DNA of 64,000 bases from Hamiltosporidium tvaerminnensis FI-OER-3-3 (taxonomy: Eukaryota; Fungi; Microsporidia), in the NCBI GenBank assembly GCA_022605425.2, contig CM061248.1, positions 310,001 through 374,000 of the forward strand, given 5' to 3'. The notes beneath the pieces are model-generated. The model was not told where the DNA came from. It saw only the letters and a list, made by a program, of their open reading frames with translations, and searched no databases. Shown one piece after another: positions 1-44,218 of this stretch. The number at the start of each line of letters is the position of its first letter. The first letter of the stretch is position 1. A program made the position numbers and the translations under genes.

Positions 1-1510
1 ACTGACTTTCTTATTGATCGCTTCATGTATTGTTTGATTTTTCATTTTTATGTTGAAAAGATATCTATCTCTTCTTGCGAGAATAAAATTGGACATTGTA
101 ATGCGTCATAAGAGCGATAAGTTTCGAACACTCGCCAAACATTACCGTCTCTTCGAAAGAAAACTATATCTCGAACGTTAAATTCAGTTCCAATGATAAC
201 AATTACTACTTCATTAATTTTTTGATCGTTGTTTTTCTTTCGGGTTTGCCGGCTGGTGTTAGTCTGCTCTAATAAACCATAACTGTCAGCTGGCATTCGT
301 TCAATATTTGTCTTAAACAGAACGACTAGATAGTTGTGTGGATCAAATAAAATTTATAATGCAGCAATAATCTATCAATAAGTGTTAGTATTTATCCGAC
401 AACGTATATCCATTTCTTTATCACTGGTTCCCATAGAATAAATTTGAAGGAATTTATGATCTGAATTTAATATTGATAGTAATAATCCAGCTCAATGATA
501 TATTCGTCCTGGACTTTGTACGTAACAAATAATTTTAACGTATAATTAAAGTTGCACTCAAATGATGATATTTGAAAACTTAAAAATGCATAAATATATT
601 TGCCAAGAAATGTTTCGATTGTATTGTATCGCATGACAAATCAGTGGATGATGGTTCCGGTTAAGAATTTAATTCCGGTAATTTTACTTTTCACCTGCAC
701 AGCACATTCCTGGGTTTCGGTCAAAATTTCAGTGCAAAATTAAACGCACAAACATTTTAATTTTTCTAAAAAAGACATAACCATAAAGACCGTAATTATA
801 ATTAGCCTAATATTGAACGAAGAAAAATTTATTTTAGCGTATAATGTTCTTCTAATTCAAATGTTGCGTTCTCGATTGGTTCTCAGTCTTGCTTTTCGTC
901 GTTATTTTGTTTCATTAGAACGAGAGTGTGCAGTATATAATTGACCGAGAGCTGATCTTAATTTTCGAGACTCTTCTGTTTTATTAGAGCGGGGTTATGT
1001 ATTTAGTAATCAAGTTTTATCCAATTTTTGTTCCCTTTGTTCTTCTGTTTTAATTGAACGGACATGTGCAGATACTTTTAGAATGGCGCACAATCTTCGG
1101 TTTCATTTCTTTTTCCCCCAATTACTCACCGTGTCGGGTGCAGAATTGGCTTGGAGTATTCTCTGCTTATCGTAAGAGGCGACTAAAAGGAACTGGTCCT
1201 CTATGTTGGGGTTGGGCGTAGGGCTTAAAATCACCCTTTAAAACCACCTTATTACGAAACCCGAAAAGGTAAACAAATCCTATAAATAAAAGACCAACGG
1301 GTGGAATTACTGAGGGAGGCTAAGGCTCTTGTAGGACTTTAGTACCGAGGATAAATAAATAAAATAAAAGTTGTTTCTCAAGCCTATAACAACATTTTCT
1401 TTCTTTCTACCTTTATAGATCAAGAATGTTTTTCCGTTTTTTAGGCATAACTTCTTTAGTCACAACTTCCTATCTATTATTTTTAAAAAAAGTAGAAAAG
1501 GATAGATTGA
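1..1510 (-). mobile_element. Degenerate Helitron, 5' part of the Rep/helicase gene (runs off the window's left end)
   Basis: Minus-strand fragments match Helitron Rep-region motifs: PGMCCAG..KVKLPEL (~660-720) and NEVVIVIIGTEFNVRDIVFFRRDGNVWRVFETYRSYDALQCPILF (ORF 48-296). Probable ORF start MPKKRK at 1448; possible 5' TC terminus near 1510 (tentative). Many stops and frameshifts. Confidence 0.8.
1124..1369 (+). mobile_element. Non-autonomous RTE-derived SINE-like element with structured 5' head, inserted in the Helitron
   Basis: GC-rich island. Head with stems and TCGTAAGAGGCGACTAA; RTE-type 5'UTR motif GGGGTTGGGCGTAGGGCT (1208-1225); RTE-type 3' end GAGGGAGGCTAAGGCTC..GGACTTTAGTACC; (TAAA)n tail 1351-1369. 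Aligns with the element at 43890-44088. Confidence 0.65.
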
Positions 1511-36383: not shown

Positions 36384-36941
36384 ATGGGAATGAATTATCT
36401 ATCTGGCATAGAAAACGGCGCCTTTTATGAAGGCGAGCAAATGACACCAACAGGACCATTTAAAATAGATATGAAGGTAGAATTAATACAGCTAAGACAG
36501 GGATTTTTATGTGGTGTGTTTAGAATATACAATCTAACAAAAGAGCACGATCTTCTTATAACGTATTTTGAAGGTGAAATTATGGGAACATATACCAATC
36601 CATTTTTACCGGCTCTTACAAGCGAAGCAGAGGATGATATACTTCATTGGAATAAATTTCCGGAATGGGAATTGAATTATATTTCTGAACCAGAATCTTA
36701 TGATTATGAAGCCAATAATTTTCTATACATTAAAATTAAAGAAAGGTTTTTATTACCCGATCCATCAATAAAAAACATACCAGGTGCATCTATAGAAGGA
36801 TTATACTATTGTAGGTATAGTAAACAAAAGGATTTTTTTAGTGGATTTTATTTTTATAAAAATTATACTTCCAATACTTCACAGCATCTTAAACTTCAAA
36901 GAACAAAAAAAAGAACAGCTGAATATTATGAGTTTTGTTAA
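36384..36941 (+). CDS. GID4: GID complex substrate receptor Gid4/Vid24-like
   Basis: LCG, LITYFEGEI, DILHWNKF, KERFLLPD, IPGASIEGLYY, GFYF motifs. The start could be the second ATG (36390). Confidence 0.85.
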   Translation: MGMNYLSGIENGAFYEGEQMTPTGPFKIDMKVELIQLRQGFLCGVFRIYNLTKEHDLLITYFEGEIMGTYTNPFLPALTSEAEDDILHWNKFPEWELNYISEPESYDYEANNFLYIKIKERFLLPDPSIKNIPGASIEGLYYCRYSKQKDFFSGFYFYKNYTSNTSQHLKLQRTKKRTAEYYEFC

Positions 36942-40677: not shown

Positions 40678-40795
40678 AGCTACGGCCATATCCAGAGTAA
40701 AGCACCGGAAATCGTCAGATCTCCGAAGTTAAGCCACCGAGAGCCAGGGTAGTACTAAGTAGGGCGACCGCTTGGGAACCTCTGGTGCTGTAGTT
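40678..40795 (+). rRNA. 5S rRNA
   Basis: AGCTACGGCCATA.., GATCTCCGAAGTTAAGC (box A), TAGTACT, GGGAA; terminal stem AGCTAC/GTAGTT; T-rich Pol III terminator; TATAAATA ~28 bp upstream. Confidence 0.95.
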
Positions 40796-41149
40796 TTGTT
40801 TTTTTCCAAAAGATGTAATCCTAGTTTAATTTTATTAAGATTCAATAGAGAATATTTTTTCTTTTATCATTAAACTTAAGGACAGAAATGATTTTTGTTT
40901 TTTTATAAATATAATACTAGTTAAATAACAATTCGATCTTTAAAAGTAATTAATGGGTTTTTAAGATGATTTAAACTTTTAGTTTTTAAATTAATTAGTA
41001 TTTATACGAATTCTTTTGATGTTTATAAAAGAACTTGAAGTATAGATGGGGAATTAATTTAATATTTAAGTGATTTAAAAAACCGAGCTAAACGTGTATT
41101 CAAAAGTATAAGCTTCATCTTAAAAATCAAATTCGTGTTTTTTTTCGCA

Positions 41150-43889: not shown

Positions 43890-44088
43890 GCTACTACTAC
43901 TAAATAGCGCTAAAGCTCTTAAAGAGTCCGGACCTCCTTAACGATTTTTTTAATTTTTATCATTTCGTTTCATTTTCGTAGCAATATGCTTTTGTGAGAT
44001 ACTCCTGTTAGCTTAATACCCAACCCTCCTCCGCTATCCAGGCTTGGTACCAGCAGATCAGAACTCATCGTTTCTCTGGTGAAGTTAA
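43890..44088 (-). mobile_element. Non-autonomous RTE-derived SINE-like element headed by a twister ribozyme, 11-bp TSD
   Basis: ACAACTATTTT (43879-43889) / ACAACGATTTT (44089-44099); GGGTTGGGTATTAAGCTAAC 5'UTR motif; RTE-like 3' end; (TAG)4 tail. Confidence 0.8.
44018..44088 (-). ncRNA. Twister ribozyme (type P1, somewhat degenerate)
   Basis: UAA-CUUC-ACC-[P3 CAGA..UCUG]-CUGG-UACCAAGC-CUGG-AUAGC-GGAG-GA-GGGU-UGG follows the twister consensus; P2 CUUC/GGAG and P4 CUGG/CUGG pair. Confidence 0.78.
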
Positions 44089-44218
44089 ACAACGATTTTA
44101 ATGTATTTTCATATATTATAGCAATAATTGGTGGTTCGTTTAATATTTCATTAAAAAAATGTTTAATTTATATTTTAATTTGTATTTTCATTTAAATTTA
44201 ACTCTTGTGCCCAAAGTT

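What the first reader, a model, noticed from the sequence alone, without database searches (positions are those of the whole stretch)
1124..1369. Sister element with the same RTE body and tail but a different, unclassified structured RNA head
Seen: the body (GGGGTTGGGCGTAGGGCT..TTATTACGAAAC) and 3' end (GGAGGCTAAGGCTCTT..CTTTAGTACC + microsatellite) align with the twister element. The head is unrelated: stem GCAGA(1140)/TCTGC(1162), hairpin TCGT-AAGAG-GCGA (1170-1182), then CTAA and AAGGAA. That order resembles the P1'-P4-J4/2(C)-P2' half of HDV-like ribozymes known from RTE 5'UTRs, but I cannot place a canonical P3/L3. Inference: heads are modular and interchangeable, and this position is where a ribozyme is expected, so it is a candidate non-canonical self-cleaving motif.
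Basis: partly seen in the sequence, partly recalled or inferred. Interest (0 to 1): 0.8.

Follow-up and report, generated by a model that had tools for sequence, protein, structure and literature searches.

The report
Conserved RNA head on mini-retroelement
This is one decayed copy of an abundant 240-base hitch-hiking retroelement of a microsporidian whose first 90 bases replace the twister ribozyme of a sister family; that head contains a small folded RNA motif found letter for letter at the front of unrelated jumping genes in other organisms, so it is a real, unclassified 5' module and an untested candidate ribozyme, but not an HDV-like one.

Summary
Window 1122-1369 (+) is one old copy of a ~240-nt bipartite non-autonomous retroelement with target-site duplications, a (GAAT)n/(AAAT)n tail and at least 390 candidate copies.

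Its body and tail are homologous to the twister-headed family at window 43895-44095 (family consensuses 98/123 identical, z 10.7). The 90-nt heads are not significantly alike.

The head matches no Rfam family in more than 20 copies. It is not tRNA- or 5S-like, does not fold better than shuffles, and shows no covariation among its own decaying copies. It cannot be threaded on an HDV-like fold.

Positions 39-71 of the head (window 1160-1192) are the best-conserved part of the element. The same core (28/28 nt, flanks only 57-69%) sits in three foreign metagenome contigs. One of these places it in the 5' UTR of an intact, (TAA)n-flanked, endonuclease-less LINE of arthropod type.

The core folds as an outer stem, a 4x4 internal loop, an inner stem and an AAGAG loop. 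The outer stem covaries in the one lineage that differs there.

So the heads are modular, and this one is a selected, portable RNA module. Self-cleavage is a reasonable guess (about 0.35-0.4) but is not shown.

The scan had already noted this family elsewhere in this genome.

The parts
1122..1369 (+). One copy (86% to the family consensus) of the ~240-nt bipartite non-autonomous retroelement. A 98% twin lies 9.4 kb upstream of the window start region (G000:C3:301741-301986).
1122..1211 (+). The 90-nt head. It takes the place that the twister ribozyme holds in the sister family.
   Evidence: (at least 150 full-length heads scored, 70-101 bits)
1160..1192 (+). Conserved core of the head (consensus positions 39-71). 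Outer stem 39-43/67-71, 4x4 internal loop GCUU/UAAA, inner stem GUCGU/GCGAC, loop AAGAG. Positions 42-69 are 28/28 identical in three foreign contigs.
1140..1166 (+). Helix GCAGA(1140-1144)/TCTGC(1162-1166) around a 17-nt loop. L063 has CAGAG/CUCUG around a 3-nt loop. The 3' strand overlaps the outer stem of the core by 2-3 nt, which means either alternative folds or a pseudoknot.
1212..1290 (+). 'Body', homologous to the RTE-like LINE 5' UTR that follows the twister in L043/L044 and in the twister family. It includes a degenerate copy of the GGG-CUAACA-CCC hairpin. The 3' limit is approximate.
1291..1352 (+). 3' part: an 8-bp hairpin in the consensus, plus the tail shared with the twister family. 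The 5' limit is approximate.
   Evidence: (176 tail-motif matches, 0 in the reversed control)
1353..1369 (+). (AAAT)n microsatellite end; (GAAT)n in most copies.
43895..44095 (-). Sister element: twister relic (44020-44091), the same body and tail, and a (TAG)n end.

Best explanation
**Shown.**
- The locus is a dead copy of an abundant SINE-like deletion derivative of an RTE-like LINE (5' UTR piece, 3' tail, microsatellite).
- In this family the twister ribozyme of the sister family has been replaced, at exactly the same place, by a different 90-nt head.
- That head carries a 33-nt structured RNA core under purifying selection. It is the best-kept part of the family.
- The core is identical in front of unrelated non-LTR elements from other organisms, while its flanks differ and its outer stem covaries.

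**Inferred.**
- The head is a portable, host-independent 5' RNA module.
- It does for this family what twister does for the sister family: it gives read-through transcripts a defined 5' end, most simply by self-cleavage just upstream of the UUCCCC start. The whole module then stays on the RNA and is copied with it.
- It is not an HDV-like ribozyme, nor any class held in Rfam.
- If it cleaves, it is an unclassified motif.
For: **Position.** It occupies the same slot as twister, between the element's 5' end and the shared body. In the twister family the copies start at the predicted cut site, as described for Perere-3 of Schistosoma mansoni (PMC8501958).

**Uniform 5' ends.** Copies start at (T)TCCCC, directly after the target-site duplication.

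**Constraint.**
- Head positions 19-67 have mean column identity 0.93, and 41-60 about 0.95, against 0.82-0.90 elsewhere.
- The core survives in 72%-identical old copies.
- The core is 28/28 identical in L063, L064 and L065, with flanks at 57-69% (Fisher p <= 0.002).

**RNA-level signal.**
- The outer stem changes from UCUC/GGGA to CCUCC/GGAGG: two double changes, one G.U to C-G change, and one new pair.
- Only 13/500 shuffles reach the observed number of cells changed on both sides, and 21/500 reach the covariation score.
- The GCAGA/UCUGC helix recurs in L063 with a 3-nt loop instead of 17 nt.

**Not a Pol III head.** The core lies in the 5' UTR of an intact 1171-aa LINE ORF.

**Portability.** It occurs both in a microsporidian and in an arthropod-type LINE. 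This fits a function that needs no host factor.
Against: - No cleavage has been shown.
- No RNA evidence was obtained. The four RNA runs laid on the window held no reads of this organism.
- Folding energy of the head is no better than shuffles: z -0.48 for a consensus-like copy and +0.60 for the window copy.
- There is no covariation within the family.
- The cross-lineage covariation rests on a single lineage (L064/L065).
- The inner stem and both loops never vary. That would also fit a protein or DNA recognition site, or recent horizontal spread.
- The competing helices (closing stem 3-12/81-90, GCAGA/UCUGC, outer stem) cannot all form at once, and none could be chosen.
- In L064 the homologous CCCA is not at the element's apparent 5' end.
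- In L064/L065, A-box-like and B-box-like strings follow the core.
- In L065 a twister relic lies about 95 nt upstream on the same strand. The two modules may therefore coexist rather than substitute for each other.
- I could not confirm that a LINE of this genome carries the head.
Confidence: 0.38

Rival explanations
1. The head is a cis-acting RNA module with another role, such as binding the LINE protein or a host protein, RNA stability or export, or cap-independent translation in the LINEs. It does not make the 5' end itself.
For: - The loops and the inner stem are invariant across lineages, which is typical of a protein-binding site.
- The core sits 40-65 nt from the 5' end, not at it.
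- A twister relic lies upstream of the core in L065.
- R2-type LINEs are known to use 5' RNA for protein binding (background knowledge).
Against: - It does not explain how the uniform 5' end arises.
- It does not explain why exactly the twister segment was replaced.
- SINE-like copies need no translation.
Confidence: 0.25
2. The head is an internal promoter, Pol II or an atypical Pol III type, and fixes the transcription start at the element's first base. In that case the conservation is at the DNA level.
For: - The 5' ends are uniform.
- The 28-nt block is perfectly invariant, including its 'stem'.
- There is no T4 run in the consensus.
- A weak A-box-like GAGCAGAATTGG lies at +17.
- A/B-box-like strings lie next to the core in L064/L065.
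Against: - There is no B box in the head.
- No copy scores as tRNA: ARAGORN finds none, and RF00005 finds only 53 genuine tRNAs in the genome.
- There is no 5S similarity.
- The core lies in the 5' UTR of a 3.7-kb LINE, which Pol III could not transcribe.
- The outer stem covaries.
- A host-factor-dependent promoter is unlikely to work both in arthropod-type hosts and in a microsporidian (inference).
Confidence: 0.2
3. The head is a non-canonical HDV-like ribozyme, with the hairpin as P4, C1183 as the catalytic C of J4/2, and AAGGAA as P2'.
For: - A C-U-A-A follows a hairpin (window 1183-1186).
- HDV-like ribozymes are known at 5' ends of R2 and RTE elements (cited in PMC8501958).
Against: - P1 as GCAGA/TCTGC would cut 18 nt inside the element, not at its end.
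- There is no space for P3/L3.
- The only partner for AAGG(G/A)A is UCCC at positions 2-5, upstream of that P1. This gives the wrong strand order and no double pseudoknot.
- C62 (C1183) pairs with G48 in the conserved inner stem.
- No HDV-family model hits.
Confidence: 0.03
4. The head is an ordinary SINE head derived from a tRNA, 5S or other small cellular RNA, or is a known SINE central domain.
For: - A cloverleaf-like drawing is possible: closing stem plus three hairpins (87% of cells paired).
- tRNA-like boxes lie next to the core in L064/L065.
Against: - ARAGORN and Rfam are negative on more than 30 copies.
- The 5S alignment is at chance level.
- Arm lengths are wrong for a tRNA: 10-bp acceptor, 27-nt 'D arm', and no T loop.
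- No library of SINE domains (Repbase, Dfam) was on hand, so that part is untested.
Confidence: 0.06
5. The head is a passenger without function, spread by template switching and recent horizontal transfer. On this view its conservation only reflects youth.
For: - The 28-32 nt identity could reflect recent common descent.
- There is no thermodynamic or within-family signal.
Against: - In the same alignable stretch the flanks have diverged to 57-69% while the core shows no change.
- The core is the slowest-changing part across subfamilies and old copies.
Confidence: 0.08

Closest known systems
Twister (T-variant) ribozymes at the 5' end of Perere-3 (RTE-clade) LINEs of Schistosoma mansoni (Liu et al. 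2021, PMC8501958)
   Same: - The sister family here carries the same kind of twister, down to the ...CCAAGCC..GGAUAAAGGAGGAGGG-UUG ending.
- Its copies start at the cut site.
- The head studied here sits in exactly that slot, in front of the same 5' UTR body.
   Different: - The head lacks the twister hallmarks: the CCCAAGCC loop, the GAGGG strand and the U-AA cut site.
- It is not hit by any twister model.
- It does not align with twister better than chance.
HDV-like ribozymes at 5' ends of R2, RTE and L1Tc-type retrotransposons
   Same: - A 5'-terminal position in non-LTR elements that are co-transcribed with host sequences.
- The whole motif would stay on the cut RNA.
   Different: The defining nested double pseudoknot cannot be drawn. 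See the membership test.
LINE deletion derivatives and SINE-like partners of 'stringent' LINEs, including tRNA-headed SINEs with RTE tails
   Same: - Short and non-coding.
- Target-site duplications, a LINE-type 3' tail and a microsatellite end.
- Hundreds of copies.
   Different: - The head is neither tRNA, 5S nor 7SL.
- It is a LINE-type 5' module, which is also found in the 5' UTR of an autonomous LINE (L063).
[quoted passage not shown]
   Same: The cut would lie upstream of the whole motif.
   Different: - No hit to the Rfam hatchet model.
- Hatchet is known only from metagenomes of microbial type.
- I could not compare the consensus drawing, because figures are not held.

Membership tests
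HDV-like self-cleaving ribozyme | P1 (6-7 bp) begins at the first nucleotide after the cut, and its 3' strand follows the P3 hairpin some 20-40 nt downstream. | tested here: not met
   - The 5' UUCCCCA finds only a 5/7 match at positions 31-37, or its good partner at 84-90, the far end of the head (sequence).
HDV-like self-cleaving ribozyme | P3 (3 bp) with L3, and a 2-bp P1.1 between L3 and J1/4. | tested here: not met
   No placement is possible. There are only 13 nt between the 8-14/27-33 pairing strands, and 5 nt between the outer-stem strand and the hairpin (sequence).
HDV-like self-cleaving ribozyme | Strand order P1-P2-P3-P1'-P4-P2' (a nested double pseudoknot), with an unpaired catalytic C in J4/2. 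| tested here: not met
   - The only partner of GGGA (68-71) upstream of the hairpin is UCCC (2-5) or UCUC (39-42). Both give a different topology.
- C62 is paired in the conserved inner stem.
HDV-like self-cleaving ribozyme | A match to the Rfam HDV, CPEB3 or drz-Agam models. | tested here: not met
   No hit at E<=10 on the window copy, on a consensus-like copy, on 20 further copies or on the three foreign contigs. These models do not encode pseudoknots, so this row is weak on its own.
Twister ribozyme | The conserved loops (U-AA cut site, GCC, UCCCAAGCC, UAAA, GAGGG) and the two pseudoknots. | tested here: not met
   - Only a UAAAA-GGGA stretch after a hairpin is reminiscent of twister.
- There is no twister model hit.
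- Alignment to the family's own twister is at chance level.
tRNA-derived SINE head | A cloverleaf recognisable as tRNA, with A and B boxes at tRNA spacing. | tested here: not met
   - ARAGORN finds nothing on the window, on the consensus (also at a lowered threshold) or on 60 loci.
- RF00005 over the genome finds 53 tRNAs and no heads.
- There is no B box in the head (sequence).
5S-derived SINE head | Similarity to 5S rRNA, including its internal control region. | tested here: not met
   Local alignment to the window's own 5S gene (40678-40796) scores below the shuffle mean.
Non-autonomous non-LTR retroelement (SINE-like LINE derivative) | Dispersed copies with target-site duplications, a defined 5' end and a LINE-type 3' tail with a microsatellite. 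| tested here: met
Non-autonomous non-LTR retroelement (SINE-like LINE derivative) | A partner LINE that shares the 3' tail, and here the 5' part as well. | tested here: inconclusive
   - Body and tail match the twister-headed LINE lineage (L043/L044/L061) at about 75-80%.
- The exact tail motif lies 465 bp beyond 69%-related LINE fragments on C5 and C8.
Self-cleaving ribozyme (any class) | Site-specific self-scission of the transcript. | not testable with these tools
   This needs a bench assay or end-specific RNA data. The RNA runs laid on the window held no reads of the organism.
Known SINE central domains (CORE, V, Deu, Nin-DC, Meta and others) | Sequence match to the domain consensus. | not testable with these tools
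   No Repbase or Dfam library was on hand. A text search of papers for core strings found only unrelated primers.

The most novel reading that the evidence does not exclude
[quoted passage not shown] It would define the 5' ends of LINE and SINE RNAs, and would move as a cassette between retrotransposon clades and between arthropod-type hosts and a microsporidian parasite.
Probability: 0.3. Interest if true: 0.9.

Novelty: new variant of a known kind. Interest (0 to 1): 0.6.

Why it matters
Non-LTR retrotransposons that lack their own promoter must cut themselves out of host transcripts. Only HDV-like and twister ribozymes are known to do this.

Here a family that outnumbers its twister-headed sister about twenty-fold carries a different, strongly conserved RNA module in the ribozyme's place. 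The same module turns up on an unrelated LINE from another organism. If it cleaves, it is a new natural ribozyme class with a ready biological role. If it does not, it is a new type of portable 5' element, whether promoter, protein-binding or stabilising, whose spread across LINE clades and between host and parasite lineages shows how retroelement ends are assembled from cassettes.

Either way the question is directly testable with one in vitro transcription experiment.

Tried and rejected
**Known RNA families.** Rfam scans of the window (gathering and E<=10), of the locus alone, of a consensus-like copy, of 20 further copies and of the three foreign contigs found nothing on the head.

**tRNA or 5S origin.** Rejected.

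**Thermodynamic signal.** None.

**Covariation within the family.** Both a cloverleaf model and a pseudoknot model stayed at shuffle level. Dead copies decay neutrally, so this is uninformative rather than negative.

**Descent of the head from twister.** An apparently colinear alignment (CUCUGC....AAG.., UAAA-GGA) is not significant.

**RNA evidence.** No RNA run holds the locus. Four raw-read RNA runs listed only for sharing a species label (shown under a different organism code from the runs that hold the locus) gave only low-complexity A-rich matches (0-2 reads at >=99%). They say nothing either way.

**Partner LINE.**
- 14 RT-bearing loci (L045-L058) carry neither the head nor the tail.
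- APE-domain hits are few and none lies near a head.
- No head among the 150 listed lies upstream of any of the 150 listed RT hits that I compared by eye, contig by contig (C1-C12 only).
- Further genome stretches could not be fetched, and I did not try to get round that limit.

**Relatives of the L063 LINE.** Six 5' UTRs lack the core.

**Prokaryotic and viral collections.** Two bacterial hits to the loop-only pattern have non-complementary 'stems' and are chance. There were no viral hits.

**Hatchet.** No model hit, and the consensus drawing is not readable here.

**Mini-intron reading.** GUAAGAG ... ACUAAAAG (18 nt) was considered as a mini-intron. It was rejected as too short, and because retro-copies keep it.

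Full report
**What is at the locus**

The only correction is that the element begins two bases earlier, at 1122.

It is a repeat.
- The 246-nt stretch has 393 first-look candidates in the 21.6-Mb, 17-contig genome. The 40 that were scored cover it end to end at 78-100% identity.
- The head alone has 284 candidates.
- A sequence profile of the head gives at least 150 full-length matches of 70-101 bits.
- Thirty aligned copies show a constant 5' start (T)TCCCC, a (GAAT)n or (AAAT)n end, and target-site duplications of 9-15 bp.
- The window copy is 86% identical to the consensus. It has a 98% twin 9.4 kb away that shares its flanks, so this is a segmental duplication.

The genome is intron-poor and gene-dense. 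Hsp70 and SMC each read as a single ORF. Other agents' notes call it the Daphnia parasite Hamiltosporidium tvaerminnensis. I did not verify the name.

**The sister family and the shared parts**

The twister element at window 43895-44095 (-) belongs to a family of about 21 copies.
- Its consensus is a textbook type-P1 twister. Window 44020-44091 scores 31.2 bits, and seven of ten further decayed copies score 25-33 bits, all below the curated 67.2 bits.
- The consensus ends in the same ...GGAGGAGGG-UUG as the twisters that head Perere-3 (RTE-clade) LINEs in Schistosoma mansoni. There, cleavage, co-transcription and target-site duplications next to the cut site have been shown (PMC8501958).
- The same twister plus the 'body' opens a degraded, roughly 3-kb, LINE-like element with remnants of an endonuclease-type ORF start (L043/L044).

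Copy against copy, the two short families do not align. Consensus against consensus, body plus tail align at 98/123 with z=10.7. The heads do not align: z is 1.9 globally and 1.3 locally, and the reverse complement scores higher. The swap is precise: the twister (63 nt) is replaced by a 90-nt head in front of the same UUG(G/A)GC... body.

**What the head is not**

- It matches no Rfam family at E<=10. This was tested on the window copy, a consensus-like copy, 20 further copies and the foreign homologues.
- It is not a tRNA. ARAGORN finds nothing on the window, on the consensus or on 60 loci. The tRNA model finds only 53 genuine tRNAs genome-wide.
- It is not 5S-like.
- It does not fold better than shuffled sequence.
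- Within the family, neither a cloverleaf-like model nor a pseudoknotted model shows covariation beyond shuffles. This is expected of neutrally decaying copies and so says little.

The HDV-like reading fails on topology.
- Nothing pairs with the 5' end at HDV distance.
- There is no room for P3/L3.
- The strand that could pair with AAGG(G/A)A lies upstream of the proposed P1.
- The proposed catalytic C1183 is paired in a conserved stem.

**What the head is**

Three results change the picture.

1. Across 27 independent copies, head positions 19-67 are the best-kept part of the whole element. Mean column identity is 0.93, and about 0.95 for positions 41-60, against 0.82-0.90 elsewhere. The core also persists in 72%-identical old copies.

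2. A scan of metagenome contigs for the core found three foreign contigs.
   - In L063 the core lies about 45 nt from the 5' end of an element flanked by (TAA)n. It sits in the 5' UTR of an intact 1171-aa ORF that has a reverse-transcriptase domain and no detectable N-terminal endonuclease.
   - The closest relatives of that ORF (RT-region identities in the mid-50s to 60%) are in beetles and in many 3.5-4.4-kb contigs. It is therefore an arthropod-type, probably Dong/R4-like, LINE.
   - L064 and L065 come from another metagenome. They carry the head (86-88% identity over positions 21-69) in front of a different body and an (ATGG)-type end.
   - In all three contigs, positions 42-69 are 28/28 identical while the alignable flanks are 57-69% identical (Fisher p <= 0.002). 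The L063 head aligns over its whole length, including the 5' CCCC.

3. The core folds in single-sequence predictions of several homologues as outer stem 39-43/67-71, a 4x4 internal loop GCUU/UAAA, inner stem GUCGU/GCGAC and loop AAGAG.
   - The outer stem is UCUC/GGGA here and CCUCC/GGAGG in L064/L065. That is two double changes, one G.U to C-G change, and one added pair.
   - Only 13 of 500 shuffles reach the observed number of cells changed on both sides, and 21 of 500 reach the covariation score.
It overlaps the outer stem by 2-3 nt, so the two are either alternatives or parts of a pseudoknot. I could not decide between these.

Six LINEs with RT regions 49-59% identical to that of L063 have entirely different 5' UTRs. 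Heads are therefore exchanged even among fairly close relatives.

**How it most likely works**

Shown: a portable, selected RNA-level module sits at the 5' end, in the slot where the sister family has a ribozyme whose cut site coincides with the element's start.

Inferred: like twister, it provides the defined 5' end of transcripts that start in flanking DNA, most simply by self-cleavage upstream of UUCCCC.

Arguments for this reading:
- the precise replacement of the twister;
- the uniform 5' ends;
- invariant loops beside a covarying stem;
- presence in an autonomous LINE, which argues against a Pol III head;
- occurrence in hosts as different as arthropod-type organisms and a microsporidian, which favours a function that needs no host factor.

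Arguments against it:
- there is no biochemical or RNA evidence at all;
- the covariation comes from a single lineage;
- the invariant inner stem would also suit a protein or DNA site;
- A-box-like and B-box-like strings follow the core in L064/L065;
- a twister relic lies about 95 nt upstream of the core in L065, so the two modules may coexist rather than substitute for each other.

My odds:
| Reading | Probability |
|---|---|
| 5'-processing (self-cleaving) module | about 0.38 |
| Another RNA-level role | 0.25 |
| Internal promoter | 0.20 |
| Passenger without function | 0.08 |
| Small-RNA-derived SINE head | 0.06 |
| HDV-like ribozyme | 0.03 |

**Comparison with what is known, and novelty**

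The element as such is a known kind: a non-autonomous LINE derivative. The scan had already noted this family elsewhere in the genome (s1-599512, s1-612278, s1-617658).

Twister at RTE 5' ends is published. What I did not find described is this head core. It is not in Rfam, and the paper library has no match to its sequence. No SINE-domain library could be consulted. I therefore rate it a new variant of a known kind, with about a 0.3 chance of being something categorically new, namely a new ribozyme class.

**Limits**
The earlier claim that a 3.1-kb LINE of this genome carries the same first ~160 nt could therefore not be checked.
- A tail motif identical to this family's lies 465 bp beyond LINE fragments on contigs C5 and C8. 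This remains unexplained.
- The RNA runs on offer carried a different organism code from the runs that hold this locus, and contained no reads of this organism.

Noticed in passing
window ~1219-1243 (degenerate here); L071 and L072 5' UTRs; twister-family consensus: A small hairpin GGG(G)-CUAAC(A)-CCC in the shared 'body' recurs in the 5' UTRs of two arthropod-type LINEs related to L063 (for example GGGGCTAACCCCCC in L071). It looks like a second portable 5' UTR module.
   Followed up: partly
L065:210-275 (-) and L065:98-163 (-): In this foreign contig a twister-P1 relic (30.6 bits) with an RTE-like 'body' lies about 95 nt upstream of the head core, on the same strand. This is either one composite element or two adjacent insertions.
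   Followed up: partly
L064:587-650 and L065:40-100 (-): About 12 nt after the core come an A-box-like TAGTCTAGTGG and a B-box-like GGTTCTACCCC at tRNA spacing. ARAGORN calls no tRNA there.
   Followed up: partly
family consensus positions ~158-181 (window ~1283-1306): A strong 8-bp hairpin, CCCACUGG-AAAAAGA-CCGGUGGG, lies in the 3' part and is absent from the twister family. It causes spurious terminator-like sRNA hits on the opposite strand. It may be the stem recognised by the LINE's reverse transcriptase.
   Followed up: no
G000:C5:626096, 637867; C8:728814, 758861 (coordinates only): The family's tail motif lies a constant ~465 bp beyond 69%-related LINE 3' fragments, in a unit repeated at least four times (at least five to seven related fragments in all). 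No head lies nearby. This is possibly the true partner LINE's 3' end.
   Followed up: partly
window 36594-36639 (-): A weak, core-like match to the head profile (E=0.012, model positions 33-76) has no body or tail after it. It is either a very old fragment or chance.
   Followed up: partly
window 1172-1189: The invariant core contains GUAAGAG ... ACUAAAAG, resembling a 5' splice site, a branch site and an AG within 18 nt. An AUG in good context at head positions 10-12 opens a 14-codon ORF that ends in this motif. Both are probably coincidental.
   Followed up: no
G000:C3:301741-301986 versus window 1124-1369: The window copy and its flanks are duplicated 9.4 kb away at 98% identity. This is a segmental duplication that also covers the neighbouring peptidase gene region.
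   Followed up: no
window 40678-40796 (+): A 5S rRNA gene (85.7 bits).
   Followed up: no
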